From the NCBI GenBank assembly GCA_977020255.1, contig CDROCS010000983.1:186001-250000 (forward strand): a stretch of 64,000 nt of DNA, written 5' to 3'. Under the pieces are notes generated by a model. It did no database searches, was not told the origin of the DNA, and was given only the letters and a program-made list of their open reading frames with translations. The position numbers and the translations under genes were made by a program. This document shows, one piece after another, positions 12,407-34,779 of this stretch. The DNA comes from Obrimoposthia wandeli (Eukaryota). Every line of letters starts with the position of its first letter. Positions within the stretch are counted from its first letter, which is position 1.

Positions 12407-13807
12407 ATGGCAGAACCAGATGAATTCTTGGTATCGGTCAATGGAGACCCTGTTAAAGTAACGGGAATATTACCATGTACATTTATAATTGGACGTAATA
12501 CGATCACTATACCAGTTAGAATCATGAAAGAATGTCCTGAACCTACAATTTTAGGAATGGATGTATTATCACAACTTAAAGGGATAAGTATTGATTTACA
12601 AGATCCAAGATTGAAGGATAGCACATCAAACAGACAAATAAACCAAATTGATGTAATCATAGAGAATCCTATAAAAATCGGTAAAAGATCGCAATTTCTT
12701 ATTCAAGGTCACACATTATCAGAAGATAAAGGACCAGTTGTGTTCGAACCATCACGAGATTTCATAGAGAAATACGAATTACCAGTTGTGAGTACAGTAT
12801 GCCTGATCGAAAATCACAAAATACCAGTTAGACTGATGAATACAACCAACAATGACATCCTATTATACAGAGGAATGAGGTTGGGAAAGATAGCACAGAT
12901 GGAGAATCCCACCGTGTGTGCTATGAAACTCGATAAAGATACGAACGATTACGAAGAAATAGTAATCCAATCAGAAAGACTGACAACTAGAGAAAAGAAA
13001 CAATTACTTGATCTAATACATAAATTTCCGAAAGTAATTGCAAAAAATCCATATGACATAGGAGAAACACCTGTCATAAAACATACAATACCACTGACAG
13101 AAGACAAAGTAGTCAGAAGAAGACCATATCGAGTACCATTACAATTACAAGATGAAGTAAAAAGTCAGATTGAAGATATGTCTAAAACAGGAGTAATTAG
13201 ACCGAGTTTTTCGCCATTCTCAGCACCTGTGGTGTTGGTAAAAAAGAAGGATGGGAAAATGAGATTCTGTATAGATTTCAGAGAACTGAACAAGATCACA
13301 AGAAAAGATGTGTATCCATTACCTAGAATCGAAGAGATGCTCGATAAATTGGGTAATTCAGATTATTTTACGACATTGGATTTGCAGAGTGGATACTGGC
13401 AAATCGAGATAGAGGAAGAGGATAAACACAAAACAGCCTTTTCCTGCGGAGATGGATTATACGAATGCGAAAAGATGCCATTCGGACTGACAGGAGCTCC
13501 AGCAACATTTCAGCGTTGCATGAATTTTGTACTCGCATCGTGTGCAAACACGATGGTTTATATCGATGACATAATAATATTTTCGAAAACGTTCGAAGAA
13601 CATTTAAAAAATCTTGAAGTTGTATTTAAAAGACTGGAAAATGCTAAATTAAAAGTTAAACCTACAAAATGCGTATGGGCTAAAGAGCGAGTAACATTTT
13701 TAGGACATATAGTATCGAAAGAAGGCATTCGACCTGATCCGGCAAAGATCGAGAAAGTAAAAGCGCATTTAGCGCCAAAGACTGTTAAAGAGATACAGAG
13801 TTTTTAG
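12407..13807 (+). CDS. pol: Pol, N-terminal part: retropepsin C-terminal half, dUTPase-like spacer, reverse transcriptase
   Basis: SVNGDPVKVTG flap and ILGMDVL; RRRPYRVP, PFSAPVVLVKKKDGKMRFCIDFRELN, LDLQSGYWQI, MPFGL, YIDD; ends at a 1-nt frameshift in T5 (13801-13805) where QSFLGLANYYRRF is expected. Confidence 0.95.
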   Translation: MAEPDEFLVSVNGDPVKVTGILPCTFIIGRNTITIPVRIMKECPEPTILGMDVLSQLKGISIDLQDPRLKDSTSNRQINQIDVIIENPIKIGKRSQFLIQGHTLSEDKGPVVFEPSRDFIEKYELPVVSTVCLIENHKIPVRLMNTTNNDILLYRGMRLGKIAQMENPTVCAMKLDKDTNDYEEIVIQSERLTTREKKQLLDLIHKFPKVIAKNPYDIGETPVIKHTIPLTEDKVVRRRPYRVPLQLQDEVKSQIEDMSKTGVIRPSFSPFSAPVVLVKKKDGKMRFCIDFRELNKITRKDVYPLPRIEEMLDKLGNSDYFTTLDLQSGYWQIEIEEEDKHKTAFSCGDGLYECEKMPFGLTGAPATFQRCMNFVLASCANTMVYIDDIIIFSKTFEEHLKNLEVVFKRLENAKLKVKPTKCVWAKERVTFLGHIVSKEGIRPDPAKIEKVKAHLAPKTVKEIQSF

Positions 13808-13863
13808 GTCTTGCAAATTATTATAGACGATTTGTTGAACATTTTTCAGATATAGCAACACCA

Positions 13864-16800
13864 TTGAGAAAGTTGACGAGAAAAGATGAGAAGTTCATAT
13901 GGGGAGAAGAAGCCCAACAAGCGTTCGAGCATTTAAAAGAAAGATTGATAAAAGCACCAATATTAGCGTTTCCAGATATAAACCGACAATTCATACTTAT
14001 GACAGATGCAAGTAACTATGCTGTAGGAGCAGTATTGGGACAAGAGGATGACGAAGGAAGAGAACACGTCATCGCGTATGCGAGTAGAGGATTAAACAGA
14101 GCCGAAAGAGGATACTCTGTTATCGAAAAGGAATGTCTAGCCATAGTGTATTCGTGTAGACAGTACAGACACTATTTGCTAGGACAAAAAGTATTCCTGT
14201 ATACAGATCACAAACCACTACAGTTCTTATATAAACATAGAGATGAGATGAGTAGATTAAACAGATGGTTTCTAAAATTGGCCGAATTCGATCTAGAAAT
14301 CCGTTATAGAACCGGAAAGTCGAACGGCAACGCAGATTGTTTATCGAGATTGACAAATGTAGACGAGAAAGGAAACATAATTCCAGAAGAAGATGAAACC
14401 AATGACCAAAAAGGAGAAGCAAATCTACTGACGATTTTGCTAAAGACGGGTAAAATAGACAAAGAGATCATCAAAGAACAGAAAGAAGACGAAGAACTGA
14501 GTCTAATCAAAGAATTGTTGGTGAAAGGAGATCTAAACGATGAAATGACGAAAAAATACTCGATAAAAGAAGGAATCTTGTATATTGTCAATAATGTCGG
14601 AAAGATAGTAGTAGTAATTCCGAAGTCATTGAAACCAGCAGTGATGATCCAGTATCACGACGGAACACTAGGAGGACATCTGTCAGGGCGAAAGACAATA
14701 GCCAGAATCAAAGAGAAGTACCATTGGGATGGTATGGAAGACGACATAAAACAATGGTGTAAACAATGTAAAGTATGTTTAACCAGAAAAGACACCGGAA
14801 CTCGTACTAAAGTTCCGTTGAAACCAATGCCAGTTCCTTTGGCACCAATGGAATTCACAGCGATGGATATATTGGGACCATTGAGAGAATCAAGTAAAGG
14901 AAACAAGTATGTCATAGTATTTACGGATTACATGACGAGATGGGTAGAAGCATATCCCATGCAGAACCAGAAAGCTGAAACAATAGCGCAAATCTTAGTA
15001 GAAGAGATAATATTTCGATACGGAGTGCCTAGAAAGTTGTTAACGGATCAAGGTAAGAACTTCACTGGAGAAGTCATAAAAGCAGTATCGAAGATATTCG
15101 GAATCATGAAGTTACAAACTTCACCATATCACCCACAGACAGATGGTCTGGTAGAAAGGTTTAATAAAACTTTATGTATGATGGTACAATCCTATTGCTC
15201 AGATAAGCAAGAGGATTGGGATAAATATTTACCTTCATGTTTATATGCTTACAGGAATTCAGTTCGAGAGGCGACAGGTCACACACCATTCTATCTGATG
15301 TATCTCAGACAGAACAATATGCCAATGGATCTGGAATGGACCGAGCCAACATCTCAGTACCTAGAAACTGAACAATACATTGTCGTCATGAAGGAAAGGT
15401 TACAAGATGCTTGGACCAAAGCCGGATTGAAGTTGAAATTCAATCAAGAAGGTTACAAGGAACAATACGACAAAAAAGCAAAACCGCATGAATTTAGAGT
15501 CGGAGATCAAGTGATGATATTTTATCCAGTCATCGAACCAGGTCTATCGTTTAAACTTCATAGACCATACAAAGGACCATACAAGGTGATCCAGACAACC
15601 TCAACAAATTTGAAAGTAATCAACGAAGAGAATCGGAACAAGGAACCGATGATTGTACATGCAAATCGATGCAAATTAGTACCAAATAAAGATAATGCGT
15701 CACGATATGAGTTAAGATCACAGAAATCGAAATCGAATACCAATACCATTAAACTTACACGAATGGTAAGTGATCGGAACTACATAAACACGATGACGAG
15801 TGGTAGCGAGGAAAAACCAGCGAGAATTGGTATGCTCAGAATGAAGTACCAAGAGGAAAAGGAAGTAATCCGACACATCGCACCACAAGAGATATTAGAA
15901 GAAGACGAAGAGATAATAGTTGTTTTCGAAAAAACACAACCAACAGATGTGGCGAAAGAAGTCATTGTGAAAGATGCACTGACAAACGAATTTCTATGCG
16001 AACTTAGAGTGTCATACTACGACGGAAATACATTAGTCGCATCACTATATCAAAATTCCAATGTGTTTACGACTGAGAAAGTGATAATCGAAATCACATT
16101 GACACCAAACATAGTTGCATGGCAGAACTATGACAATACTGAAGCAGGACTAGCCAGTCAGGAAGAGAAGGAACCGGCCGGTGGTCACATACTGCATGGT
16201 ACACCAAAAAGACTCAAACAAGAATACCACGATGTAATAATGGTATTACGTAATTCACATGGGAAAAGAGATATCATGAGAGTCCATTTAATCGACGCTG
16301 ACACTGAAAAGATAATTTGTCAGATGGACACCAAATACTTTGATGGAAAGACAATTGTATGTTGTATACCAGAATCTCACCGATTAGAGACAGATCAAAC
16401 GGAAGTATCTGTAAGGTTGAGCGTAATAGAAGGATTCCATTCGCCAACCCATCCGGAAGTGACTAACAATAAAATCATCAAAGCAACGGCAGAGTTACGC
16501 ATTGACAGCGGATACCGGAAGTGGGAGGCTAAAAATAAAAAGCCACAAAGAATCAATATGATCCGAGAACAAGTGACCAACTCAATCCAGCCAAAATATC
16601 ATGCTGAAATAGTATCATCCGCGCCAAGTGTAATCACATCGATAAACGACGAAATTATAATTTTACTAAAAAATCGATGGCCGTCATCAACCGAGATACG
16701 AGTAAATTTAATTAATTATGCGAAGACACCGATATCTAAGCTGAATGTTACCTATTTTGATGGATTGTCCATCATGGGTAAATTAGAAACAATTGTCATG

Positions 16801-17280
16801 TGCTATGGAGCACAGTTCCAAGTTGAGATACTTAAAGATAGTGTAATACCGTATCCGATTCACAAATACGAAGGGGAAATCAATCCAATTATTCTAACAC
16901 CTTCATTAATTTCAGTTCAGACAGACATACCAGAATACCCTTCGAGCGAGTCTAGTGAAGACAGCGAACCGGAAAGTAACGATACAGAATCAACAGAATC
17001 CGAAGATAACATAATAGAGCGATTCGGAAGAACCATGGAGATTGAATTCGCTAAAGAGAGCAGAAAAAGACAAAACATAGAATTCGTGAAACAGAATATA
17101 CAAGAAAGACGAATTAAATCTGCAGAGGAGACCGAGTCGGAAGAAGACTCAACAAAGGAACAGACATCAGAGACAAAGATGAATATCCCTCCAGCAATAC
17201 GAATGCTGAGAGGAAAGAAACTGGCAAAACTAACTAACATCGACGAACAGATAGAAGAGATTAGAAAGACTAAAACTTGA
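13864..17280 (+). CDS. pol: Pol, C-terminal part: RT connection, RNase H, integrase (HHCC, DDE, GPY/F) plus ~500-aa extension
   Basis: TDASNYAVGAVL, EKECLAI, TDHKPL; H-x6-H...C-x2-C; MDILGPL, TDQGKNF, GLVERFNKTL; YKGPYKV; frame is open from the frameshift at ~13806. Confidence 0.95.
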   Translation: MRKLTRKDEKFIWGEEAQQAFEHLKERLIKAPILAFPDINRQFILMTDASNYAVGAVLGQEDDEGREHVIAYASRGLNRAERGYSVIEKECLAIVYSCRQYRHYLLGQKVFLYTDHKPLQFLYKHRDEMSRLNRWFLKLAEFDLEIRYRTGKSNGNADCLSRLTNVDEKGNIIPEEDETNDQKGEANLLTILLKTGKIDKEIIKEQKEDEELSLIKELLVKGDLNDEMTKKYSIKEGILYIVNNVGKIVVVIPKSLKPAVMIQYHDGTLGGHLSGRKTIARIKEKYHWDGMEDDIKQWCKQCKVCLTRKDTGTRTKVPLKPMPVPLAPMEFTAMDILGPLRESSKGNKYVIVFTDYMTRWVEAYPMQNQKAETIAQILVEEIIFRYGVPRKLLTDQGKNFTGEVIKAVSKIFGIMKLQTSPYHPQTDGLVERFNKTLCMMVQSYCSDKQEDWDKYLPSCLYAYRNSVREATGHTPFYLMYLRQNNMPMDLEWTEPTSQYLETEQYIVVMKERLQDAWTKAGLKLKFNQEGYKEQYDKKAKPHEFRVGDQVMIFYPVIEPGLSFKLHRPYKGPYKVIQTTSTNLKVINEENRNKEPMIVHANRCKLVPNKDNASRYELRSQKSKSNTNTIKLTRMVSDRNYINTMTSGSEEKPARIGMLRMKYQEEKEVIRHIAPQEILEEDEEIIVVFEKTQPTDVAKEVIVKDALTNEFLCELRVSYYDGNTLVASLYQNSNVFTTEKVIIEITLTPNIVAWQNYDNTEAGLASQEEKEPAGGHILHGTPKRLKQEYHDVIMVLRNSHGKRDIMRVHLIDADTEKIICQMDTKYFDGKTIVCCIPESHRLETDQTEVSVRLSVIEGFHSPTHPEVTNNKIIKATAELRIDSGYRKWEAKNKKPQRINMIREQVTNSIQPKYHAEIVSSAPSVITSINDEIIILLKNRWPSSTEIRVNLINYAKTPISKLNVTYFDGLSIMGKLETIVMCYGAQFQVEILKDSVIPYPIHKYEGEINPIILTPSLISVQTDIPEYPSSESSEDSEPESNDTESTESEDNIIERFGRTMEIEFAKESRKRQNIEFVKQNIQERRIKSAEETESEEDSTKEQTSETKMNIPPAIRMLRGKKLAKLTNIDEQIEEIRKTKT

Positions 17281-17293
17281 AGAGTCAGAATTA

Positions 17294-17791
17294 ATGCCAC
17301 AAATGAGTGAGATCATTCCAGGTAAGTTGTACCTCGGAAATGTGGAGGATGCAACAGATGAAAAGAAACTGTTGGAACAAGGGATAACATATGTGATCAA
17401 CGTTACAATGAATCACAAATCGCAATATCAGACGATCAGAGCTATGACATTAAGAGTAAAAGACTCAATGGATGCTAATCTTCTCGAATGGTTCGTAGAA
17501 ACAAACGAAATACTTCACAGAGAACTCCGAAACCAAGGAAAAGTGTTGGTACATTGCCAGAAAGGAATTTCTCGATCAGCAACTCTAGTATTAGCATATC
17601 TAATAAAGACTAGACGAATGCAGGTACTAGAAGCGCTAAAATACCTACAGGAGAGAAGAAGTATTGCAAACCCAAATCTTAATTTTTGGGACAGTTGGCA
17701 AATTACCAACTTCTGTTGCAAGAACAAAGACGGATGGACGACATTCCTGAGGATCCAAAGGAAAAGAATTTCCTCCAAGCATTATCACTGA
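17294..17791 (+). CDS. Dual-specificity protein phosphatase domain (catalytically intact motif), frameshifted into the next ORF
   Basis: SEIIPGKLYLG, VINVT, general-acid D in VKDSMDANL, HCQKGISRSAT (HCx5R), AYLI, NPNLNF; adding 1 T at 17683-17687 gives NFLGQLANYQ continuing into 17686-20133. Confidence 0.9.
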   Translation: MPQMSEIIPGKLYLGNVEDATDEKKLLEQGITYVINVTMNHKSQYQTIRAMTLRVKDSMDANLLEWFVETNEILHRELRNQGKVLVHCQKGISRSATLVLAYLIKTRRMQVLEALKYLQERRSIANPNLNFWDSWQITNFCCKNKDGWTTFLRIQRKRISSKHYH

Positions 17792-20133
17792 CTGGGTTAT
17801 TTTTAGCCGGAGTCGATAAAATTACACAGATAATGCCAAAAGTATTTTTATGTCATCCAGGAGATATAGATACTGCTGGATTAAAGTTCCATAGTATCAA
17901 CCGAGTAATCAACATTGTTGAAGTCGGAAACGAAATAATTAGTCTGTGTCAAAATACTGAAGATGACACCACTCGATACATACATGCTTCCAATCGAGAG
18001 ATAAACGATGCACAACAACATCTGACGAAATTGACTCAAACCATCCAAGCTGAAGTCACAGAAGGAAACGGCGTTCTGATATATCAGAAAAAAGGTACAA
18101 TGTTAGCGCCTACCATAGGTGTATCCTTGTTGGTAGAGTACCATGGTCACACGCCAGAAGAAGCAATGGTCTACATCAAACAGAATAGACCGAATACGGA
18201 ATTCAAACCGTTACTCGTTCGAGAAATAGAGAAATACACCGAAAAGAGGAAACAACAACGAGAAACAAATGAAGCTACAACAACAGTGCCCAGCTTTCAA
18301 TACCAAAGATTGCTAGCGATAGGCTTGTTAAGTTGTTTAATGCCGATAACGGGAGCACAGGAGATAGGCTCCAACCACGGAAATAGTTCCTGGTTCAACG
18401 AAATCCACAATTACACCATAAAGTACCATACACCGGCACTGATGATGTTATTAGTGTTGTTAGAACTAATTGATGTATGGATCATCCGAAAATGTCTTCG
18501 ATCTATGAGAACCGACAGTAAAAGATTTCAGTTTGTAAAGATGAAAAGACCAAATGGACCAACAAACAAAGTGCTTGTGTATCTAGACGAAAGGATCGAG
18601 GACAACATAGTAAATGAAGCGATATTTTACCCACAAAACAGAATACTGAATCAATTTCGAATAGATTACGAAGCTGACCGACAGCGCACACTTGACCAAA
18701 TATCAACAACATTCGCTGGATGCAAGCAGAAGAAAACGAGTTGTAAAGGAAATACAAAAGATGCTGATACAAAAGGACCAACGTATATATTCGATGGCGA
18801 TGTCATCAAAACACGTGAGTATGGAAGTAAAAGAGTGATAATTGAAACAATGGAAGGACATAAAACATGCTTGTCCGCCAAAAATGGATTCGGAAAGTTG
18901 ACGATACAAGGTAAACCAGTACAGTTGATTATCGGACGAGATGGAATCGAGGAAATGTCAAAACAACGACAGACAACAAAACGAACCAATCAGAAACAGA
19001 TATCTCTCAAACGATTGATAATTAAAACCCTTTGCAAAAGGTCAGTCAAGGCCCTGTGCACCGTTGCACAAGGATTGATTTATGGAGTAGTAATTGGATT
19101 GGTACTGCAAGCCATGCCAACCAGTAAAGCCGAATTGATGACACTATCCGAATATAATTTACATTTGAGAAATCTAGACAACACCCTAGAAATAATCAAG
19201 ACATCCCACAGTAGAGCCGTGATGATCATGTGTGTAAAAGGATGTCCAGGACGAATGTGTATAGTCCCAGCGACCGAAATGATAACACTTAATGGACATT
19301 ATGGAGTTAGTGTTGTCACATGTGAAGACTACATATTTGGACAAACTAAAATAGTGCTTCTCAGTGACATGTCCAACCAAAGTGCACACAAATTTAAAAT
19401 ATTAACCATCAAGAGTAAAGGAATACCAGCAGTACGTTACGGTATTCTAGAATTGGTTAATCCAATACTCGCACTGATCATTGGATTTATAATATTAATA
19501 TTACTCATCTTGTTTTGTTGTTCAAAGATAGAGTCGAGATCAAAAAAGAAACGTCATGATCTCGCAAGACGAACAGGTCAAATGAACTTACAAAAATTCA
19601 ACACAATTATACCAAGACCACCATTTTTAGATGAACCAGCACCAGAGTACCAGCCAACGATATACGAACACATCGAGGAAAGACCGTACTATATGAGTAA
19701 TTTGACTTGTTTCATTGAAGTTCCTGAGTTTAGGAATCGAACGATCATAGGAATCATGCTGATCGTACAAATCACCACTACCAAGGCTAGTTATGAGATC
19801 ATGATCAGTAAATGGAGACAAGACGTAATACGGGCAATATACATAGAAATTCCCCTACTAAAAACAAATCACGTAGTAGACATTCATCTACAGACGTCAG
19901 CAACTGACAATATCGATCAGAAATTGTATGTCATTCGACAGGTCAGAATAAAAATCGACCAAGATACACCCGTTTACAATTTAATATTATTGCATCATGA
20001 AAGAGTGTTATACCTACGGATAACAATATCAAAGAGGAAGCGGATTATCCAAAGTATCCGAACAAAGTCATTAATATTACCTAGAGATGAGCGCATCTGG
20101 AAAAATTGTCGACAGGATTATGATCACAGGTAG
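17686..20133 (+). CDS. Accessory polyprotein: pseudo-DSP domain followed by signal-peptide/ectodomain/TM modules
   Basis: 17821-18237 aligns by eye with the DSP (ITQIMPKVFL; YQKKGTML in place of HCQKGISR); hydrophobic segments at 18307-18357, 18436-18486, 19075-19131, 19465-19521, 19741-19788. Confidence 0.75.
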   Translation: MGQLANYQLLLQEQRRMDDIPEDPKEKNFLQALSLTGLFLAGVDKITQIMPKVFLCHPGDIDTAGLKFHSINRVINIVEVGNEIISLCQNTEDDTTRYIHASNREINDAQQHLTKLTQTIQAEVTEGNGVLIYQKKGTMLAPTIGVSLLVEYHGHTPEEAMVYIKQNRPNTEFKPLLVREIEKYTEKRKQQRETNEATTTVPSFQYQRLLAIGLLSCLMPITGAQEIGSNHGNSSWFNEIHNYTIKYHTPALMMLLVLLELIDVWIIRKCLRSMRTDSKRFQFVKMKRPNGPTNKVLVYLDERIEDNIVNEAIFYPQNRILNQFRIDYEADRQRTLDQISTTFAGCKQKKTSCKGNTKDADTKGPTYIFDGDVIKTREYGSKRVIIETMEGHKTCLSAKNGFGKLTIQGKPVQLIIGRDGIEEMSKQRQTTKRTNQKQISLKRLIIKTLCKRSVKALCTVAQGLIYGVVIGLVLQAMPTSKAELMTLSEYNLHLRNLDNTLEIIKTSHSRAVMIMCVKGCPGRMCIVPATEMITLNGHYGVSVVTCEDYIFGQTKIVLLSDMSNQSAHKFKILTIKSKGIPAVRYGILELVNPILALIIGFIILILLILFCCSKIESRSKKKRHDLARRTGQMNLQKFNTIIPRPPFLDEPAPEYQPTIYEHIEERPYYMSNLTCFIEVPEFRNRTIIGIMLIVQITTTKASYEIMISKWRQDVIRAIYIEIPLLKTNHVVDIHLQTSATDNIDQKLYVIRQVRIKIDQDTPVYNLILLHHERVLYLRITISKRKRIIQSIRTKSLILPRDERIWKNCRQDYDHR

Positions 20134-20596
20134 ACGACGTAAAGCCGTATGGAATTCCGTTAGGTTATTTTTCAGATTGCTAGAAACTGACAGCGTGACA
20201 GTAATGTGTCCCAACCCAGATGGCGTAATCAGATTCGAAATCCAAAGCCAAATGTTAGTACCACATTTCAACACAGAATGTCTGTGTAATCGAATTGCCA
20301 GTAATTCTACAGAGACCTCGACCATAATCATGATAATAACAGGTGAAATATTCTACATAACTCTAAGATACCAGAACCGTCGATTTCGTAGATACGGTAT
20401 AAGTATCAAACCCAGGAAAATCATTCCCAAAAGACCAAGCCTCGTCATACAGAAGGCAAAAGTAAACGAAAGTAAACGACATTCCAAGAAACCGACAGTG
20501 ATCAAAACAAAGACAGAAGCGAAAGAAAAAGAGCTAAATCCCAGAAACCAAAGTACAATTATTAAGAGGACAAGAGTGAGGGAACGATCCCACTAG
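20087..20596 (+). CDS. Probable frameshifted continuation of the accessory polyprotein
   Basis: Overlaps both neighbours; same A-rich codon style; no recognisable domain. Confidence 0.5.
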   Translation: MSASGKIVDRIMITGRRRKAVWNSVRLFFRLLETDSVTVMCPNPDGVIRFEIQSQMLVPHFNTECLCNRIASNSTETSTIIMIITGEIFYITLRYQNRRFRRYGISIKPRKIIPKRPSLVIQKAKVNESKRHSKKPTVIKTKTEAKEKELNPRNQSTIIKRTRVRERSH

Positions 20597-20973
20597 ATCC
20601 AAAACATCATTTTCAATCCAAAATAATAATACCTGTTCCACCAGAAACAAAACACCCAAATCCCCGAATTTTTAGAAAATCGGACATAATACATGGAAAC
20701 CGATCAAAACCCATGGAAATGTCATTCGAACCGACAAACAACAAAATGAAGTATGATTATAAATCATCAGACAGCGGAATAACAGCGGTCAATGCCCTAA
20801 TTGGAATGGCCGTAGTGTCAACAGCAGTGGTTTTATTGACAATCGTGTGCGTAAAAGGCAGTCAAGTATGCCCAGGAATACGACGAAAATGCGAAGGATT
20901 GCGATGCTGTGACACACCCATCATGGAGGAAGTGGAATTGCGACCCTTACCTCCGCCTCCCATCAAGATATGA
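20566..20973 (+). CDS. Terminal segment with TM helix and Cys/Pro-rich tail (ATG at 20713; frame open from 20566)
   Basis: ALIGMAVVSTAVVLLTIVCV (20794-20853) followed by CPGIRRKCEGLRCC and LPPPP. Confidence 0.6.
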   Translation, partial: EDKSEGTIPLDPKHHFQSKIIIPVPPETKHPNPRIFRKSDIIHGNRSKPMEMSFEPTNNKMKYDYKSSDSGITAVNALIGMAVVSTAVVLLTIVCVKGSQVCPGIRRKCEGLRCCDTPIMEEVELRPLPPPPIKI

Positions 20974-21096
20974 TGAGTCAGAGGAGGTTGTAGATAAATT
21001 AGTGTGTGAAATATGTAGAAATATCTAGAAGCGATTGTACAAATAGTAGAAGTATATAAAACTCATGTAGAAATTAATCATCATCATGTATTTAGA

Positions 21097-21396
21097 ATGG
21101 CCGAAGAATGCCCAATATGTTTAGAAGATCTAACCGAACGAAGAACAAGACCCGAAACCTGCAACCATTTACACCACGAGGAATGTTTATCGACATGGAT
21201 CAGAACTTATGGACAGTTCGGACACCCAACATACCCTCGTTGCCCTATATGCAGAAGACAATTCGCAAGATTCGTCATGTTAGAACCCAACCAAAGGGAT
21301 GTATATGTACAGGTGGTATTCTGCTGGAAGAATTTCGGAGAGTGTTGGTGTTATTACTGTTTGTCAGATCGACAAAATCAGACCATTTTTGTGTAA
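21097..21396 (+). CDS. RING-H2 protein 1 (putative E3 ubiquitin ligase)
   Basis: CPIC...CNHLHHEEC-LSTW...CPICR = C3H2C3; extra C-x6-CWC-x2-C motif. Confidence 0.9.
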   Translation: MAEECPICLEDLTERRTRPETCNHLHHEECLSTWIRTYGQFGHPTYPRCPICRRQFARFVMLEPNQRDVYVQVVFCWKNFGECWCYYCLSDRQNQTIFV

Positions 21397-21456
21397 AGAT
21401 CACACAACCACCAGTCCTCAATCGAGCCCAAATTCAACATCAACCCTCCCACAGTA

Positions 21457-21762
21457 ATGTCTGGAGAATGTTCCATCTGCTACGAGAGCATCGTGGACTT
21501 CTACACCAAGCCCAACAACTGCGACCACCTTTTCCACGTCGAATGCCTCGAGACGTGGATCCCCATCGCAAACAGCAACAACCCTCTCGACTTCCCAACC
21601 TGCCCGATGTGCAGAGCGACCTTCTCAGTACACTACGTGTACAACCAAGACAGCCTCCAAGCAGTGGTACCCATCGTACACTGCTGGAAAACCATCTGCG
21701 ATTGCTGGTGCTCGTTCTGCGTGGAGGAGCGAAGCACAGGCCAGCCCAATCCCCAACAATAA
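21457..21762 (+). CDS. RING-H2 protein 2 (putative E3 ubiquitin ligase)
   Basis: CSIC...CDHLFHVEC-LETW...CPMCR; extra HCWKTICDCWCSFC motif, paralogous to RING 1. Confidence 0.9.
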   Translation: MSGECSICYESIVDFYTKPNNCDHLFHVECLETWIPIANSNNPLDFPTCPMCRATFSVHYVYNQDSLQAVVPIVHCWKTICDCWCSFCVEERSTGQPNPQQ

Positions 21763-22095
21763 TCGAAGGTAACTTTCTGACTTGAACGTGACATCATGAA
21801 CTACCCTGTGTATCGCATACCGCGATAAATTAGCTACCATAATTGTAATCATAATTATAGAATCTTGTGAACTGTAAATTGACCATTACCATTTTTATGT
21901 ATGATGTTTAACTGAAATTGTAATTATTATACTGAATTTCTAAAAAAGACAATTTTTATGCTTAGTGTGAATGCGTAAACATGCCTAAAATCGAAACAAA
22001 ACTCGGTAGGATTAGATAACTAAGGATTCATTTTGAAATAAAATTTAAATTAACGATGAGAACGGTGAACCCCAAATTGAAGGAGTCATTTTCTC

Positions 22096-22632
22096 ATGCA
22101 GATGTTGTGCTCCGTATGCATGGAGAAGATTTGGGCGGTATCAGCATCCCCTGTCGGCTGCCGTCACAAATTTCACGAGGAGTGCCTCTATTTGTGGACC
22201 AAGGTTCGAACCTCCGGACAAATCACCTGTCCACTGTGCCGGACACCCTTCGCCAAATGGACACTCCAGAGCCGCGGAAGACACAAAGGCACCCGATCGC
22301 CTGCCAGCTGCATTGGTGGCATCCATTGCCAATGCTACGTGTGTCTCGCACGCCGGCGCGACACACAACTGGGCGTCCGCGAGAGATGGCGGTCTAGTCG
22401 AGACTGCCACTCGTGGTTCCAGGCCAGACGGCACTGGATTGAAAGCCATAACATGAACGGGCAGCAGTTCGACCTATTCATCGACAGCCCGCATTTGACC
22501 CGGAGCCAGCAACTCCATTTGTACAACGGGGACAGTCCGTCCTTTCCCGACCTTCCCCTGGAGCAGGTTCTACGCTACCTGACCAGTCGGAACCAGCCGA
22601 CAATAACAATTGACCTGACACATGAAAACTGA
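22096..22632 (+). CDS. RING-H2 protein 3 with C-terminal SIM-like motif
   Basis: CSVC...CRHKFHEEC-LYLW...CPLCR; CIGGIHCQCYVC; ends ITIDLTHEN. Confidence 0.85.
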   Translation: MQMLCSVCMEKIWAVSASPVGCRHKFHEECLYLWTKVRTSGQITCPLCRTPFAKWTLQSRGRHKGTRSPASCIGGIHCQCYVCLARRRDTQLGVRERWRSSRDCHSWFQARRHWIESHNMNGQQFDLFIDSPHLTRSQQLHLYNGDSPSFPDLPLEQVLRYLTSRNQPTITIDLTHEN

Positions 22633-23362
22633 CACTGTCCTCCCTTCTTTCCTTCCTAATCTGTAATTTTGTGTGTAAATTTTTAGTTGTGTATAAATAA
22701 TAGTGTATGGTTTGAGACTTGCTCCAAATTATATATTATGTTTCCCACTGGAAAACCGAGATTTTGAAAAAATTTTTTTGGGCATGTTTGTTGAAGTTGA
22801 ATGATTGATTTTGTAGGGATGAACCTAAAATCAACAGCCAAGGGCTTATTTAAGTAAAATCGATACGTTCCGGGGACGTAACTTTTTTGGAACCCCCGAG
22901 GTATGTTAAGGTTGAGAATTAAGAAAATTAAATATTTTAGTTGATTAAATACTAAAATAAAAATCCTTGAAAGCAAGGTCGAAAATTAAATTAAAATATT
23001 AATTTGAGTTTTAGAAGTAAAATTAGTGAAATATTAGGGTAAAATTAGGAGGACCACGAAGGTCGTGTATTATGCGAAAATATATAAAAGTTTAAAGTTA
23101 ATTAACAAAAGGGACAAAAATAAGAATTTAATTAAAAGAAAAACGGTTAATTAAAACCGTCAATCAAGAAAGAAAAAGGTAAGCACATTTTCGTGCAGTA
23201 AAATCAATTTAATTCTTTTCAGCTGTCGTTGACTGACAGGAAGAATTGAGATAGCCTCTGCTCCAGCAAATAACCGTCAATCAAGGAAAAAGTGAGCGCA
23301 TTTTGTGCAGTCAATAATTTTTAAATTTATTTCAGCTGTCGTTGACTGACAGGGATAGAAGC

Positions 23363-23370
23363 TATAAAAG
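23363..23370 (+). promoter_or_regulatory. TATA box in LTR U3
   Basis: TATAAAAG followed ~25-35 nt later by TCA-containing initiator-like sequence. Confidence 0.55.
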
Positions 23371-23436
23371 GCAGAGGATTTGGACACCAATTCACAATCA
23401 CAAATTCAGAATCACTCCCTGACTACAGGTTGAGCG

Positions 23437-23633
23437 GAATAGACTCAATCCGAAAATAACGAATAGACTCAATCCGAAAATAACGAATAGACTCAATCCG
23501 AAAATAACGAATAGACTCAATCCGAAAATAACGAATAGACTCAATCCGAAAATAACGAATAGACTCAATCCGAAAATAACGAATAGACTCAATCCGAAAA
23601 TAACGAATAGACTCAATCCGAAAATAACGAATA
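23437..23633. repeat. 24-bp tandem repeat GAATAGACTCAATCCGAAAATAAC x8 (perfect)
   Basis: Eight identical units counted from 23437 to 23628 plus a partial. Confidence 0.95.
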
Positions 23634-23764
23634 AAATATATCCGAATAGCCGCGATCCAACATATTAGGAGAAGACGATCTCACGAGCGCTCCATACGGA
23701 ACTGCGTCGGACAGCTCACCCGTACCGGAATCAGCGAGTCACTGGTAAGAACACAGACTAGGTT

Positions 23765-24202
23765 CATTCATTGCCCCTAGTAGGCAATTAGGATATATTC
23801 ATTACCCCTAGTTGGTAATTCTATATTTTCTTAATAATACACAAATTCATTGCCCCTAGCTGGTAATTAGGATCACTGCCTCTTTACCACAATCATTGCC
23901 CCTAGTTGGTAATTAGGATCGGACCTTTATTCATTGTCCCCAGCGACAATTAGGAAACCTACCAGACGTTTTTTCCCGTAAGATTCATTGTCCCTAGCTG
24001 ACAATTAGGTTCATTCATTGCCCCTAGTTGGTAATTCGGATAAATATTCATTGTCCCTAGTAGACAATTCGGTAAGACTCATTGTCCACTAGCTGACAAT
24101 TCGGTTCGTTCATTGTCCGTAGTTGACAATTAGGAGTAAGTTTTTATTGTCATCTTGACAATTAGGTTTTTAGGAGATCCCTTGTCTACAGTAGACAATT
24201 TG
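23765..24202 (+). repeat. Array of 12 hairpin-forming repeats (ATTGYC-N5-8-GRYAAT) with variable spacers
   Basis: Copies at 23770, 23801, 23849, 23895, 23933, 23987, 24017, 24050, 24081, 24112, 24146, 24181. Confidence 0.9.
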
Positions 24203-24471
24203 GGTCAAACACACACAGAGAGAGTAAGGAACAAAGAAACATTTAGCTAGAGATAAGAAGTAGGAGCGAAGAAATTTAAGAGAGTTGCGTTATAGATTAA
24301 CCAACCTGAGTAAGAAGACTAAACCTAAGAAACTTAATCACCTGAACGTAAAATCGATACGTGGTTCATCCCCACTTCTTGTAGAGACTCACAGAAGTCC
24401 TTTAGGAATTTTATCATACTTTTTAGAAATACGTACATAAACGTATTGTGGTGTTAGTTACGTGAATTTTG

Positions 24472-24477
24472 AATAAA
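24472..24477 (+). terminator. Polyadenylation signal in LTR
   Basis: AATAAA followed by conserved ATTTCCTACATTAG; same arrangement at 28316 and 34569. Confidence 0.65.
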
Positions 24478-25429
24478 CAATTTCCTACATTAGAACAAGT
24501 TGTTTTTACACCCTTCAGACTAAGAGACATCAATCAAATACCTTCAGATAGTACAAGAGATTAGGCAACCATAACACTAAGTAGGCCACGACCAACTTTA
24601 AGACCTGCTTCTAATCGAACTCACGTTGGGGCCCTCCGCACACTAAGAGGCTCTATACCAAGTTTCGTATAGAAACCCCAACAATTTTATGACAAAATTA
24701 TATGAAATTCTTTATTATTTTCTTTAAACTAAAAGAAATATTTAAATTAAATTAATATAGATTTAGTCAATTTTACTGAAATATGTAAAGATTTTCAGTT
24801 TTTATTATTTATTTAGATTGTTGAATTAGTGTTTAATTATATTCTTTCATTTGTTTGATCTAAAATAGGGAGAATTTGACAATTGATGTACTACAAAATT
24901 GTGTTTACATTAAATATACATATATATATATATATATTGAACTATGGCATTTAAACAGTCCTCTCTTTTTTACTTAAGAGATAAATCTGAGATAATATTT
25001 TGATTTTATGTTTTCAATTTGTCATGTGATTTCAGTTAATCAAATTGAAAAGCTAAAATGGCTCCAACTGATCAATGTATTTTTATCGTTCCTCAATAAC
25101 TGTAAATATTACGTCGATAATTTTGTACAAAGAGTATGGATGTTTAAATTGCCTGTGACCTGTCAATTGATAAAACTCTACGTCCACTTACAAAATGAAG
25201 CGTACATGGCCTTCCTAAATCAGGTAGAACACAAATTTGTGATGAAAAGAAAGTTTAATACGATCTTTCTTTGTGTAAAATTCTAGTACATTAATAATAA
25301 AAACTTTCCATGAGCTACAAATCCCATATTACGGAATTAAATTACACGAAAGCGAGCTGGGTTAAAAGATTGCCGAATCAAATTGGTTCATGGACCAAAA
25401 GAAGATGAACATCTTGATGTGAAACGTAT

Positions 25430-25650
25430 CTTACCAGCGTTGATGATGGCGTTGTTAGCAGGCAAAACTGACAAATTTGGGGCTTTCAGAATCATCATCG
25501 TGTGATGAAGATGTGGGTCAATGTTTGGGTTGGTTTCATCTTATTTGAACATATTTTGAACATATATATACACGAGACAATTATACTACAGGAACGTTTA
25601 CCCCAATATTTACCCTTGAAAATAATCTATTTCGTAGAGAAAAGGAAATA
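25430..25650 (+). pseudogene. Tc1/mariner-superfamily transposase relic
   Basis: DGVVSRQN*QIWGFQN...VNVWVG...ERLPQYLPL resembles G-x-VN-x-QN-x-RIW...VW-x-G of Tc3-like DDE domains. Confidence 0.5.
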
Positions 25651-26606
25651 CTTGTCAAAAATTGTTTGCCTAAGATTACGAATTCTATTTTAATAATTTG
25701 AACGTTATACAATGAAAAACAATGGTAATAAACAAGAAATATATGTTTAAAATAGTTGCATTTGCATAATTTTAGATCTTGTTTTTAGGATAGATCCGGG
25801 ACAATCTGATAAATAGATATATTAATAAAATTCCAAATACAAATACATGTAAAACAAGAAATATCAAAGGCTGATTGGTTAATTCTAAATATATTTATCA
25901 GCTACATAGAGGTAACATTGTCAGTGATTTCCTGTATTTTGGTATTTATCAGATAAAAACACAGTTCATTAATATGTTTTTAATCTAATAATTTCACGAA
26001 TGTTCACATCTAATTTGTTATTTTTGTTAAAACGTGACTATTGTTTCCTGGTGTTGTTCTAATTTGACTTTCTACGTGGAATCATTTATCAAACCAGCCC
26101 ACACTCAATACACATTGGTTTGTTGCTATTAACAGACGTAGATCCAAACATCAAAAAATCGTCACTATATTTCGGTAATTTTGTTCTATTTGGAGGAGAT
26201 TGATCTGTCATGTTAAATCACTTAAACCCACTATAACACATTATTTACATTTTGTTATTTAGTTAATAAAACGTACATTAACTGATTGAAAATAAAATTA
26301 TAAAAGCAATTTAAATATTGTGAAATATCTAAACATATTATTACTTGAATATTCTTTAGACCATAAGAAGAATCACTGACTTACGAAGAAACCTTCTCAA
26401 CTGATATTCATAAAATAATTTTAAATGTATACTATACAAATAATTACGTATTATTCAGAAATCCCCCATTTTAATAATAAAAAATAATTCCTATTATTTT
26501 AAATTTATAAAGGACAAGTATTTTGTTTTTTTCTGAATATATTTTAATAAAAATATCTAAAGATTATAAAAAATACCAATTGGTTATTAAAAGTGCTAAC
26601 ATCGAG

Positions 26607-28730
26607 AAAATTTATTGACTTTCATTATGAGAATATTAATCCATTCTGGAAATTACAATATGTGAAATTACAACACCTGATCATTTCTAATAAGTTGTAG
26701 TGTTTGAGTTCCTATTACGTTTTAAAATCATTTATTATATCTATAAACAAAAATTTATTGACTTTCATTATGAGAATATCAATCTGTTAGGATTAGGATT
26801 CTAATAATTAATGAAAATAATTAATTATTATATAGTGGAATAAATCCTTGAAAGCAAGGTTAAAAATAATATAAAATTGAATTGGAATTTTAAAAAAAAT
26901 GAAATAAAAAGGTATTTTAGGACCTTGAGGAGGTCAAGTGTTTGGTGCGTGATATATAATGGATTTTATAAATTTCAAAGTGCCCAAAAAGGATTTAGCA
27001 AGAAAAACCAAAGCAATTAAGAAAATAAGATTAATTAGGAAAGGCACTAAAGAAAGAAGAATTAAGTGCTACAAGAAGTAGGACATTGCAGCAAATAAAA
27101 TCACAGTAGCCGACTGGCTGAGAATTAGCCAGCCGGCAAGAACTTTGCAACAGTTGAGTGCTGTCTCCAGACTTTGGGAAGTGGCCAGCTGACAACAAGC
27201 GAGGTAAGAATCACTTAGTTAAGTGGCATTAATTTATTCTATTATCTAGGAGATATAACGAAGCAGAGTAGCGTAGTCGCGACACAAATTAAGTATCGTC
27301 GATAGAATCCGAGCACACCAGAGATATTCGAGCACATCCGGCAAAAGATATTTGATTATTCAGAAAAGCAACTGAAGAAAAAAGAAGGTAGAATACTGCA
27401 TACCAGACAGAATTACTTGATTATTCCCAGAAAAAACCTACTGCTATCACCGAAGCCGAGCTTTCCTATCGGGATCAAGAAACGCCAAGACTGGACAGCG
27501 GTCAGAACGGAATCGGATCAAGCCTGTCCAGCAATCGGTCGGAACGAGTCTGTTCAGCGGGCAATCAGATCTAGTCTATCTGACAATCAATCGGATCGGA
27601 CGAAAACGACACGAGGCAATTCATCTCACAAGTCGTCTCTGCGGAATCGGATTAAGAATATCCAGCGGTCAACCGGATCGAGTCTATCCAACAATCTATG
27701 CGAAGGACGGTAAGAGCAGAGTGTGAAAGTGTAAAAGTAAATTGCCCATATTTGTCTCATATTTTACCAAAGGTAAATTGGTTTGATTTGGTAGTGATAA
27801 AGATTAAAAGAAATTTTTAAAATAAGATTGAATATCAGCCCTCGTAAAAACAAGTTGAAATAATTTTAAAAGAAGTTTGTAAAATAAGATTGAATATCAG
27901 CCCTCGTAAAAACAAATTGAAATAATCTTAAAATAAGTTTTTAAAATAAGAAGTTCAATAAAGTGTTGAATTTAGAAGGTGTGTTAAAATTAAAGTTAGG
28001 ATATCAAAGAGTATAATTGTCGCGAATAAATGAACTCTACCAAAGATATCAAAGTAAATTGCCCCATATTTGTTCCATATTTGAGAGTGTTAACTCAGTA
28101 TAAAATCAAACCATATTTTTAGAGCAACCAGCTCTATAAAATCTACAACCTTAAATTACCCATATTTTTAGAGTAAAGACTCTAGTAAACAAACGACCCT
28201 CAATTAAAATCGATACGTGGACCATCCCCACTTGTGTAGAGACTTTGTGAAAAGTAACTAGGATTAGTCTTGTGGTTTTTAGAACGTGTTAGAACGTAAT
28301 TTCGTGTGTATTAGAAATAAAGATTTCCTACATTAGGCAGTGTTGTATTGAACAGAACCCTTGCAAGCAAGTAAGTGTCAACTACTCCATATACAACACC
28401 ACATTAAGGGAATTTTCCAGTACCCGTATACACAGCTCTTCACACATTTCGCAACACCTAGACATAATAAACCTTCAGATAGAAATTGAGATAGACAAGC
28501 ACAACTTAAGTAGGCTACAAACAACTACAAGCCCTGCTTCTATAGAACTCACGTTGGGGCCCTCCATCTGAGGATCTATATCTAAACTCCAAGGCAGTTT
28601 CATAGAGAAACCCCAACAAATCCATTCTGGAAATTACAATATGTGAAATTACAACACCTGATCATTTCTAATAAGTTTGTAGTGTTTGAGTTCCTATTAC
28701 GTTTTAAAATTATTTATTAAATCTATAAAC
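26607..28730. repeat. 143-bp tandem duplication whose second copy is split by solo LTR B
   Basis: TTTATTGACTTTCATTATGAGAATAT at 26611 and 26754; sequence resumes AATCCATTCTGG at 28619. Confidence 0.85.
26785..28618 (+). mobile_element. Solo LTR B (1834 bp)
   Basis: TGTTAGG...CCCCAACA with 4-bp TSD AATC (26781-26784, 28619-28622); shares ATCCTTGAAAGCAAGGT, AAAATCGATACGTGG and U5 end with LTR A. Confidence 0.9.
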
Positions 28731-29629
28731 AAACTTAGTATGAAAACTTATATGACGTTGATTTACTAGTAATTCATGTAAGCATATCTGCGCTAACAAA
28801 TCTCCAAAAATAAAACAAAATCAAAATAATAGGTTCATACAAGTAGTTGAAAATAATATATATGTAAAGCCCTTGAAAGTTAGTGTGAGAAATATATTTT
28901 AGAAAACACTATGTTACTAAATATAGTATCAGATTTTTGTTTTTGTTTAAATGAACTTCGATTAAAATTTGTTTTAAAAAATTGAATTTGTGTCAAATTT
29001 GAGTCAAGATTGTTTTCTTTTAAAAGTGTGATTTAGTAAGTTTAAACGTCTAAATATCTGAGTCGTAACACTGAAGTGTCTATTAGAGAACATCAGCCAA
29101 CAAAACCCCATCCCTCTTGAAATATAACAACTAAGAAATATTACAAATGTTAAAAATGAGAATATAGTTTTTCACATTATATTATAAAATATGTTAGTTA
29201 CAAATTAATAATTAATGTTCATTTTTTAATTTTGTTTACATTTTTGCATGAAAATGTAAATTAATCATTAAAATTTTGTTGTAAGTATTTTATGATGTCA
29301 GATATTCCAATGATATTTCAAATGAACTGAGCAAATAACTTTTATCAAATGAGTCACTGGCATAAGTGTATTATAATTTTCGAAATAATTGGATTTATCA
29401 AGACATTTAAATAATTAATTAAAATGTAAAGTTATGAAATATAGTAAACCAATGGTGACCAAAATTTGCTTGCAAAAGCAATTATAACTGTCAAAAATTT
29501 AGGAAAATATGGTGCTAAGGTAACATCAAGAGTTATAAATAGTCATCCCAAAGATTGATTAACTCATATTCTAAATAAAAATATTGTATAGTTAAAACAG
29601 AATAGTTTTTCAATCCCGTCAAAAGAAGA

Positions 29630-32815: not shown

Positions 32816-34779
32816 TGTTAGGTTTAGGAATTAGAAAATTAAAATAATTAGTCGATTTTATACTAAAATAAAAATCCTTGAAAGCAAGGTTGAAAATTAA
32901 ATTAAATATTAATTTTAAAAATCAAAACTAAAATTATTGAAATTAAGATAAAAATTAGGAGGACCACGAAGGTCGTGTATAGTGTGGAGTATATAAGGTT
33001 AGAATTAATTACTAGTAAAGTGCAAAAGGGAACAATATAGAAATCTGCCAACGTCAGCAGAAAAAAGAAAAACTACTAACGTCAGCAGAAAGGTAACCAA
33101 TTAATAAAACATCTGTCAATTACTGATATTTAAGGAATCAGTTGAATTGACAGGCAGGCAGAAAAACCCAGTGACAATTAGGATCGGTCGAAGCAGCAAC
33201 CGGAGCAACAGGCAGGTGGTAATTTAGTGGTAGTGCTCGTTTAATTGATTTTTAGATCCCATTCCAAAGTCGACTGTGCAAATTATTTAAAAGAGACATT
33301 TAACTGGAAAACCCAACGACAATCAAAGTCGACTGTGCAAATTATTTAAAAGAGACATTTAACTGGAAAACCCAACGACTAGAAAAATCCATCGAATTAC
33401 TAAGCAGCGGATCCAGTGCCGGAGTATACCCACAGTTGCGGATAGGTGAGACGATTCGAATATTCATTGTCCCTCGTTGACAATTAGGATTGTAAATTGT
33501 CTCGAATATTCATTGTCCCTCGTTGACAATTAGGATTGTAAATTGTCTCGAATATTCATTGTCCCTCGTTGACAATTAGGATTGTAAATTGTCTCGAATA
33601 TTCATTGTCCCTCGTTGACAATTAGGATTGTAAATTGTCTCGAATATTCATTGTCCCTCGTTGACAATTAGGATTGTAAATTGTCTCGAATATTCATTGT
33701 CCCTCGTTGACAATTAGGATTGTAAATTGTCTCGAATATTCATTGTCCCTCGTTGACAATTAGGATTGTAAATTGTCTCGAATATTCATTGTCCCTCGTT
33801 GACAATTAGGATTTAATTGTCTCGCATATTCATTGTCCCTCGTTGACAATTAGGATTTAATTGTTTCGCATATTCATTGTCCCTCGTTGACAATTAGGAT
33901 TTTTGTCTCGCATATTCATTGTCCCTCGTTGACAATTAGGATTTTGTCTCGCATATTCATTGTCCCTCGTTGACAATTAGGATTTTTGTCTCGCATATTC
34001 ATTGTCCCTCGTTGACAATTAGGATTTAATTGTCTCGCATATTCATTGTCCCTCGTTGACAATTAGGATTTTTGTCTCGCATATTCATTGTCCTTCGTTG
34101 ACAATTAGGTTCACGAAATCATTGTCCATCGTTGACAATTAGGTTTTATACGAATCATTGTCCACAGTTGACAATTCGCGTTTGAATTCACAACAATAGA
34201 ATTTGCCGAGTTAAGAAAGCTTTACCCACACGATCTAAGTTAAGTTGAAGAAGTTTTAGGAGAGTTGTGTTATAAATTAACCAACCTAGAAAGAAGATTT
34301 GCATTCGCACCTTTATTGTCATAAGAATAAAGGTTTAACCTCCAAAATTCAAGCCGATAGCAAAGTTAAATTATTGAGAAATCTGTAGCGCGAGCTTATT
34401 CTCGAGTTAGAAGAATAACTCTAAAATCTCGATCACCCCGAACGTAAAATCGATACGTGGTTCATCCCCACTTGTTGTAGAGACTTACAGAAGTCTTAGG
34501 AACTTTTAATATATTTTTTAGAAAATACGTACATAAACGTATTGTTGTGTTTAGTTTCGTGAATTACCAATAAACGATTTCCTACATTAGAACAAGTTGT
34601 TTTTGCACCCTTCAGATTAAGAGACGTCAAAACAAACACCTTCAGATAAGAAAGAGAGATAGGCAACTATAACACTAAGTAGGCCACGACCAACTTTAAG
34701 ACCTGCTTCTATTCGAACTCACGTTGGGGCCCTCCACATTCAAGAGGATCTGTACAAGTTTCGTATAGAAACCCCAACA
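32816..34779 (+). mobile_element. Solo LTR C (1964 bp)
   Basis: TGTTAGG...CCCCAACA with 4-bp TSD AAAT (32812-32815, 34780-34783); ends closely similar to LTR A; 60-bp internal duplication at 33264-33380. Confidence 0.92.
33458..34175 (+). repeat. Tandem array of 17 hairpin repeats (core CATTGTCCCTCGTTGACAATT), 46-bp unit degrading to 44/42/41 bp
   Basis: Cores at 33463 then every 46 nt to 33785, shorter spacings afterwards; ATTGTC/GACAAT inverted arms. Confidence 0.95.

What the first reader, a model, noticed from the sequence alone, without database searches (positions are those of the whole stretch)
23745..24202. Covarying hairpin array immediately downstream of the LTR splice donor: candidate packaging/export RNA element
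Twelve repeats keep a 6-bp stem while sequence changes in pairs: ATTGCC/GGCAAT, ATTACC/GGTAAT, ATTGTC/GACAAT and G.U-wobble ATTGCC/GGTAAT, with loops of 5-8 nt and variable spacers. In both LTR A and LTR C the array starts ~17-25 nt after a GT donor, so it would be kept only in unspliced RNA, like retroviral Psi or CTE/RRE elements. Alternative: a DNA dyad site (TGTC-N-GACA dyads also occur upstream of the TATA at ~23224 and ~23336).
Basis: partly seen in the sequence, partly recalled or inferred. Interest (0 to 1): 0.75.

Follow-up and report, generated by a model that had tools for sequence, protein, structure and literature searches.

The report
Palindromic repeat array in retrotransposon LTR
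The long terminal repeat of a Ty3/gypsy-type retrotransposon carries 12 tandem copies (17 in a second copy) of a short palindrome whose arms are conserved and change together; this fits small RNA hairpins that dock a protein, but a DNA binding-site array is not excluded and the proposed packaging or export role is untested.

Summary
LTR A (22904-24683) has 12 dyad units between 23770 and 24199. LTR C (32816-34779) has 17. The arm pattern occurs 25 times against 0.2 expected by chance. Pairing is kept in 99% of cells, and two stem positions changed on both sides, one through a G.T intermediate. Between positionally matching units of A and C the arms are 35/36 identical, against 12/21 for centres and 25/43 for spacers, so the arms are under constraint.

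- There are few independent compensations (null P about 0.013-0.017).
- Single hairpins are weak and predicted to be outcompeted in context.
- Both strands fold equally well.
- Sister LTR B has lone arms but no hairpins.
- The array lies inside the LTR, upstream of the family's conserved AATAAA signal, so a second copy should sit at the 3' end of every transcript. "Kept only in unspliced RNA" therefore does not follow.
- In favour: a donor-like GGTRAGA 20-31 nt before the first arm motif, with a GC drop across it, is shared by all three LTRs.

My best reading, at confidence 0.4, is a multivalent hairpin platform in the sense transcript. Rivals are a DNA dyad array and a slippage-driven minisatellite. 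I did not fetch related copies; that step is referred.

The parts
22904..24683 (+). LTR A, directly downstream of the element's ORFs; contains the finding
   Evidence: TGTTAAG...CCCAACA ends. Homologous to LTR B and LTR C at both ends.
23081..23087 (+). TATATAA shared by LTR A, B and C (B 26953, C 32990), preceded by two small palindromes
23223..23352 (+). Two CTGTC-7 nt-GACAG dyads in a duplicated segment just upstream of an LTR-A-specific TATAAAAG (23363-23370)
23437..23633 (+). 24-bp tandem repeat, 8.2 copies, 100% identical
23744..23750 (+). Donor-like GGTAAGA; counterparts in B at 27709 and in C at 33445
   Evidence: GC falls across it in all three LTRs (0.55 to 0.39, 0.51 to 0.29, 0.47 to 0.36).
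23770..24199 (+). Dyad (hairpin) array of LTR A, 12 units
24420..24426 (+). T-run plus AG conserved in all three LTRs (B 28276, C 34515); a possible acceptor, by inference only
24472..24477 (+). AATAAA followed by a conserved block and a GT-rich run (B 28316, C 34569): likely poly(A) signal, marking the R/U5 border
   Evidence: PMC3601003.
26785..28618 (+). LTR B, solo, 4-bp target duplication AATC; no dyad units, only lone arm motifs
32816..34779 (+). LTR C, solo, 4-bp target duplication AAAT
33466..34175 (+). Dyad array of LTR C, 17 units. The last three match the last three units of LTR A by position.
12407..17280 (+). pol (reverse transcriptase, RNase H, integrase), read as one part
   Evidence: Pfam RVT_1, RT_RNaseH, Integrase_H2C2, rve. 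Best relative is 56% identical.
17294..22632 (+). Accessory ORF region: dual-specificity phosphatase, 815-aa ORF with a second phosphatase-like domain, two unassigned ORFs, RING-H2 ORF

Best explanation
The array is a tandemly multiplied LTR module of about 31 nt. Its core is a quasi-palindrome: a 6-nt arm, a 5-8 nt centre and a 6-nt arm. It sits in the variable middle of the LTR, between a conserved donor-like GGTRAGA and the conserved poly(A) signal. I read the units as short hairpins in the sense-strand LTR transcript, and possibly in the single-stranded cDNA copied from it. Together they would offer many copies of one small site, specific in both sequence and shape, to a protein; that is, a multivalent docking platform. 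In the 5' LTR copy it would lie just inside an intron. A second copy would sit at the 3' end of every transcript. Shown: the anatomy, the constraint on the arms, and the paired changes. Inferred: that the stretch is transcribed from an upstream start, that the donor-like site is used, that a protein binds, and what the platform does (marking or retention of full-length RNA, control of the adjacent donor, or control of the LTR poly(A) site).
For: Pairing and covariation:
- 95 of 96 cells form standard pairs and two pairs changed on both sides. One went G-C, G.U, A-U with the wobble form on the + strand; the other went C-G to U-A.
- The covariation score is 0.240, against 0.143 in shuffles (0/500 reach it) and at most 0.092 when partners are slid.
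- A null of five random stem substitutions, all placed in one lineage (generous to the null), gives two kept pairs with P of 0.013-0.017.

Constraint on the arms:
- Matching units A10-A12 and C15-C17 have arms 35/36 identical, centres 12/21 and spacers 25/43 (P 7e-6).
- Centre length varies from 5 to 8 nt while the arms stay intact. A hairpin loop tolerates this more easily than a rigid dimer site.
- All long insertions lie in spacers, and no decayed units exist.
- Centre and flank variants are shared across both arm classes, yet no mixed-class unit with an arm of each class exists.

Setting:
- The donor-like motif lies 20-31 nt before the first arm motif in three LTRs, with a GC step across it.
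- The conserved AATAAA lies downstream.
Against: Thermodynamics:
- Single hairpins fold at only -3.6 to -5.9 kcal/mol, and most do no better than shuffles.
- In context the mean probability of the local stems is 0.17 (LTR A) and 0.14 (LTR C), because pairings between units win.
- The whole-array z-score is about -3.6 on both strands, so the signal is palindromy, not strand-specific structure.

Signs that the arms are read as sequence:
- Arms are conserved in sequence, not only in pairing.
- LTR B has three lone left-arm motifs with the same G/A variation and three lone right-arm motifs, but no hairpins. LTR C spacers also carry lone left arms.
- The same TGTC-7 nt-GACA geometry occurs in two dyads upstream of a TATA box.

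Limits of the sample:
- Only about five stem substitution events are seen, and LTR C adds none.
- Template switching can create compensated changes without selection (PMC8794818).
- I have no expression data and no relatives. Rfam finds nothing.
Confidence: 0.4

Rival explanations
1. A DNA-level array: the units are dyad binding sites for a host DNA-binding protein, acting as an enhancer-like or boundary-like module of the LTR. The arms are two copies of one half-site in opposite orientation.
For: Arm sequence is conserved (35/36), not just the pairing. Lone half-sites occur in LTR B and in LTR C spacers. Two dyads with the same 7-nt spacing sit in a duplicated segment just upstream of a TATA box in LTR A. 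The centre is 7 nt in 26 of 29 units. Both strands fold alike. From my own knowledge, repeated protein-site arrays in LTRs and leaders are the commoner kind.
Against: A fixed protein specificity does not predict that both half-sites of a unit change in the same way (null P 0.013-0.017). Three units keep perfect arms with centres of 5, 6 or 8 nt. Three units have unequal half-sites that happen to be G.T-compatible on the sense strand. No motif library was available to name a factor.
Confidence: 0.25
2. A minisatellite without function: hairpin-prone repeats expand and contract by slippage or template switching during reverse transcription or replication, and arm-to-arm templated copying keeps them complementary.
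For: Every LTR of this family carries its own recent repeats. These include 24 bp x8.2 at 100% in LTR A, 46 bp x8 at 100% in LTR C, 62 bp x2.4 in LTR B and 35-44 bp units in the fragment at 9291-9589. LTR B and that fragment do without the dyad array. Template switching is reported to create and maintain hairpins (PMC8794818). Template structure is reported to stimulate reverse-transcriptase slippage (PMC5737552 abstract).
Against: The arms are far better conserved than centres, spacers or the flanking LTR between LTR A and LTR C. There are no decayed units, and insertions are confined to spacers. The array and its 3' border are retained in two subfamilies whose promoter-side sequence no longer aligns.
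Confidence: 0.2
3. One reading: a Psi-like or export-type RNA element that marks unspliced RNA because it lies just after the LTR donor.
For: The donor-like motif and the GC step are conserved in three LTRs. RNA export elements embedded in LTRs are a known kind: the Rec response element lies in U3, and LTR-derived sequence can act as a constitutive transport element (PMC11379458). The element has several ORFs after integrase, which would need subgenomic RNAs.
Against: The array is upstream of the conserved poly(A) signal, so it should also be present in spliced RNAs at their 3' end. It does not lie between a primer-binding site and gag. It is absent from LTR B. Nothing matches in Rfam. The hairpins are weak.
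Confidence: 0.12

Closest known systems
LTR-embedded responsive or transport RNA elements of retroviruses (for example the Rec response element in U3 of HML-2, PMC11379458)
   Same: A cis RNA element carried inside the LTR and so present at the 3' end of transcripts. It is associated with elements that make spliced and unspliced RNAs.
   Different: Those are single folded domains of several hundred nt, defined by function. Here there is a tandem array of 6-bp hairpins with variable copy number, no functional data and no Rfam match.
Leader packaging signals of retroviruses and LTR retrotransposons
   Same: Stem-loops placed after a donor on the sense RNA.
   Different: Packaging signals lie between the primer-binding site and gag and occur once per genome. 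This array lies within the LTR upstream of the poly(A) signal, so it would be duplicated at both RNA ends.
Repeated protein-site arrays of LTR elements (U3 enhancer repeats; the binding-site array in the leader of Drosophila gypsy). Recalled from my own knowledge, not tested here.
   Same: About a dozen copies of a short conserved motif with variable spacers, in the non-coding part of a Ty3/gypsy-type element, with copy number differing between subfamilies.
   Different: Here the motif is a dyad whose arms covary. Its position is inside the LTR and downstream of candidate TATA boxes. No factor is known.
Inverted repeats created and maintained by template switching (PMC8794818)
   Same: Short perfect stems with apparently compensated changes.
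   Different: That is a mutational route, not a function. It does not explain why the arms are so much better conserved than centres and spacers between LTR A and LTR C.

Membership tests
LTR of a Ty3/gypsy-type (Metaviridae-like) element | Terminal short inverted repeats of the TGTTRNR...YNYAACA kind | tested here: met
   TGTTAAG or TGTTAGG ... CCCAACA in LTR A, B and C. The motif is as quoted in PMC3601003.
LTR of a Ty3/gypsy-type (Metaviridae-like) element | Short target-site duplication around solo copies | tested here: met
   AATC around LTR B and AAAT around LTR C.
LTR of a Ty3/gypsy-type (Metaviridae-like) element | AATAAA with a GT-rich stretch near the 3' end; adjacent pol in the order RT, RNase H, integrase | tested here: met
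Leader packaging signal (Psi type) | Lies between the primer-binding site and gag, after the major donor, once per genomic RNA | tested here: not met
   The array is inside the LTR, about 270 nt upstream of the AATAAA and about 480 nt before the LTR end.
Leader packaging signal (Psi type) | Conserved base-paired structure | tested here: inconclusive
   Covariation is present, but the stems are weak and not favoured in context.
Leader packaging signal (Psi type) | Bound by the element's Gag and required for encapsidation | not testable with these tools
   No gag is present in this copy.
Constitutive or responsive RNA transport elements | Similarity to a curated family | tested here: not met
   No Rfam match at E up to 1 over 22800-34900, and none at gathering score in the whole window.
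Constitutive or responsive RNA transport elements | One extended folded domain with conserved internal loops | tested here: not met
   The units are separate 6-bp hairpins. The predicted global fold is not conserved.
Constitutive or responsive RNA transport elements | Present in intron-containing transcripts | not testable with these tools
   No expression data. The position relative to the donor-like site and the poly(A) signal is only inferred.
Protein-site arrays of LTRs (enhancer or boundary type) | Tandem short motif with variable spacers | tested here: met
Protein-site arrays of LTRs (enhancer or boundary type) | Half-sites vary independently of one another | tested here: not met
   The arms change together, though the events are few.
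Protein-site arrays of LTRs (enhancer or boundary type) | Match to a known factor's motif | not tested

The most novel reading that the evidence does not exclude
The variable middle of this LTR is an intron that lies wholly inside the LTR, running from the donor-like site at 23745 to the conserved T-run plus AG at 24420-24426. The covarying hairpin array within it would be a multivalent mark of RNA that has kept this intron, so array-bearing LTRs could be inherited only from unspliced RNA.
Probability: 0.12. Interest if true: 0.7.

Novelty: new variant of a known kind. Interest (0 to 1): 0.4.

Why it matters
Cis-acting RNA signals of LTR retrotransposons are known in only a few model elements. 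A platform built from many minimal hairpins inside the LTR would be a simple modular solution not described so far, and a long R region with its own donor would itself be unusual. The case is also a caution: tandem palindromes mimic covariation because whole units are copied, so the number of independent events decides the matter, not the number of units.

Tried and rejected
- **Competing hairpin.** A hairpin between the unit's centre and its 3' flank appeared in one single-unit fold. It is only 75% paired, with no changes on both sides, so I rejected it.
- **Coding.** Unit periods are not multiples of three. The only open stretch in LTR A is 81 codons through the 24-bp repeat, upstream of the array.
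- **Known RNA families.** None match.
- **tRNA genes.** None found.
- **Host identity.** This failed. The best pol relative is 56% identical and most are unnamed metagenome proteins. The phosphatase ORF has relatives at 41% identity or less. A 7TM-like ORF has no relatives. A look-up of another non-element ORF found nothing. Nothing suggests human DNA. The window has no N.
- **Consensus fold of the LTR 5' ends.** It showed no covariation, because the palindrome of LTR B was misaligned.
- **Fourth LTR fragment (8772-9704).** It holds only 3' blocks and tells nothing about the array.
- **Literature.** Searches for an LTR element with phosphatase and RING genes, for an LTR-internal intron or for hairpin arrays found nothing to the point.
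- **Donor-like motif as chance.** GGTRAG alone is frequent (34 in the window). Only its shared position in three LTRs carries weight.

Full report
**Setting.** The window is AT-rich (about 30% GC) and has no N. I do not take it for human. On the + strand, 12407-22632 holds a Ty3/gypsy-type element. It encodes reverse transcriptase, RNase H and integrase, followed by about 5 kb of further ORFs. These include a dual-specificity phosphatase, a second phosphatase-like ORF and a RING-H2 ORF.
- Breaks, counted and not placed: pol is read in two frames (one frame change). The 5' part (5' LTR, primer-binding site, gag) is missing as one truncation. No protease domain is recognised.
- Whether the accessory ORFs are intact cannot be judged without relatives.

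**The LTR family.** Three LTRs of one family lie in the same orientation: A 22904-24683 (right after the ORFs), B 26785-28618 and C 32816-34779. B and C are solo copies with 4-bp target duplications. A fragment of a fourth lies at 8772-9704. Their ends fit the terminal motif described for animal Metaviridae LTRs (PMC3601003). A, B and C share their first 170-280 nt and their last 350-400 nt. The middle differs. Shared landmarks, given as A/B/C start positions:
- TATATAA at 23081/26953/32990
- GGTRAGA at 23744/27709/33445
- a 12-nt motif at 24351/28207/34447
- a T-run plus AG at 24420/28276/34515
- AATAAA with a conserved block and a GT-rich run at 24472/28316/34569

**The observation.** It is confirmed.
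- LTR A has twelve dyad units.
- The pattern occurs 25 times in the window against 0.2 expected.
- LTR C has 17 units of a single type, 14 of them identical. It therefore adds conservation but no covariation.

**Pairing.**
- On an alignment of the 16 distinct units, 99% of cells pair and two of six pairs changed on both sides. The wobble form G.T occurs in three units, on the + strand only.
- No shuffle reaches the covariation score, and slid partners score far lower.
- The tool warns that related rows inflate this, and units are related by duplication. I count about five stem substitution events.
- A null that is generous to chance gives the observed two kept pairs with P 0.013-0.017. This is suggestive, not decisive.
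- Centre and flank variants are shared across both arm classes, yet no unit combines an arm of one class with an arm of the other.

**Constraint.** This is the strongest new result.
- The last three units of LTR A and LTR C match by position, and the flank beyond them aligns.
- There the arms are 35/36 identical, the centres 12/21, the spacers 25/43 and the next 130 columns 70/130.
- All long insertions in LTR A fall in spacers, and no decayed unit is detectable.
- The arms have therefore been kept by selection, or by a process that acts on the arms alone.

**RNA or DNA.**

For RNA:
- the paired changes;
- the sense-strand wobble;
- intact arms around centres of 5, 6 and 8 nt.

Against RNA, or for DNA:
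- Single hairpins fold at -3.6 to -5.9 kcal/mol, and most do no better than shuffles.
- In context the local stems have mean probabilities of 0.17 and 0.14.
- The array folds equally well on both strands.
- The arms are conserved as sequence, not only as pairs.
- LTR B carries three lone left-arm motifs with the same G/A variation and three lone right-arm motifs, but no hairpin. LTR C spacers carry lone left arms.
- Two dyads with the same 7-nt spacing sit upstream of a TATA box in LTR A.
- Template switching can yield compensated changes without selection (PMC8794818).

**Position in the transcript.**
- The donor-like GGTRAGA lies 20-31 nt before the first arm motif in all three LTRs, although the sequence around it no longer aligns.
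- GC falls across it in each LTR.
- GGTRAGA occurs nine times on the + strand of the window, five of them in these LTRs.
- Taken together, this supports an exon-to-intron border and a transcription start upstream.
- But the array lies upstream of the conserved poly(A) signal. It therefore belongs to R, or to U3 if the start is downstream. Either way it would also sit at the 3' end of every transcript. "Kept only in unspliced RNA" holds at best for the 5' copy.
- LTR-embedded export elements are known (PMC11379458), so a 3' position does not exclude an RNA role.
- The conserved T-run plus AG could be an acceptor inside the LTR. That is inference only.

**Verdict.**
- My best reading is a constrained, multimerised dyad module of the LTR, acting as short sense-strand hairpins that dock a protein (0.4).
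- The rivals are a DNA dyad array (0.25), a slippage-driven minisatellite (0.2) and the specific packaging or export claim (0.12, which is a narrower version of the first).

Noticed in passing
window 17294-22632 (+): The retroelement carries extra ORFs after integrase. One is a 165-aa dual-specificity phosphatase with an intact HCxxGxxR loop. One is an 815-aa ORF with a weak second phosphatase-like domain and weak matches to membrane-spanning segments. Two are unassigned, and one is a RING-H2 ORF. The phosphatase has relatives at 41% identity or less. No paper describing such a combination was found.
   Followed up: partly
window 23437-23633 (+): A 24-bp repeat, 8.2 copies, 100% identical, lies inside LTR A between the TATA box and the donor-like site. 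An 81-codon open stretch runs through it.
   Followed up: no
window 22965-22978 and 23051-23067; LTR B 26920-26940; LTR C 32961-32977: Two small palindromes lie just upstream of the shared TATATAA. By eye, the second differs between LTR A/C and LTR B at two stem positions on both sides. The alignment tool misaligned it, so this is not confirmed.
   Followed up: partly
window 22857-22868, 24351-24362, 28207-28218, 34447-34458: A 12-nt motif (AAATCGATACGT) occurs once in each LTR and once 35 nt upstream of LTR A, against 0.5 expected. The 20 nt before LTR A are not purine-rich, so no clear polypurine tract is seen.
   Followed up: no
window 22904-34779 and 8772-9704: Three LTRs of one family lie in the same orientation within 12 kb (two are solo insertions with their own target duplications). 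A fragment of a fourth follows the same orientation and is followed by TGG. LTR B sits in a local duplication (26638-26751 matches 28619-28733 at 97%).
   Followed up: partly
window 27440-27700 and 27804-27951 (LTR B); 9291-9589: Each LTR has its own tandem repeats: units of about 30 nt with lone GRCAAT motifs and a 62-bp repeat in LTR B, and 35-44-bp units in the upstream fragment. The family seems prone to repeats.
   Followed up: no
window 23745-24202 (+): GTAAG occurs four times in the array of LTR A against 0.34 expected at the window's rate. Three of these lie in spacers. This is not seen in LTR C.
   Followed up: no
window 54758-55663 (-): A 301-aa ORF with several hydrophobic helices, receptor-like, has no Pfam hit and no relative in the word search.
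   Followed up: partly
window 41862-42674 (-): A 270-aa acidic, low-complexity ORF in a GC-richer island has no Pfam hit and is not on record in the gene index.
   Followed up: partly
window 51066-51462, 52199-53295, 1652-2167: Satellite-like arrays are present: 99-bp units, and arrays of about 10-bp units. An inverted copy of the 51143-51760 segment lies at 1652-2167 (77-79% identical).
   Followed up: no
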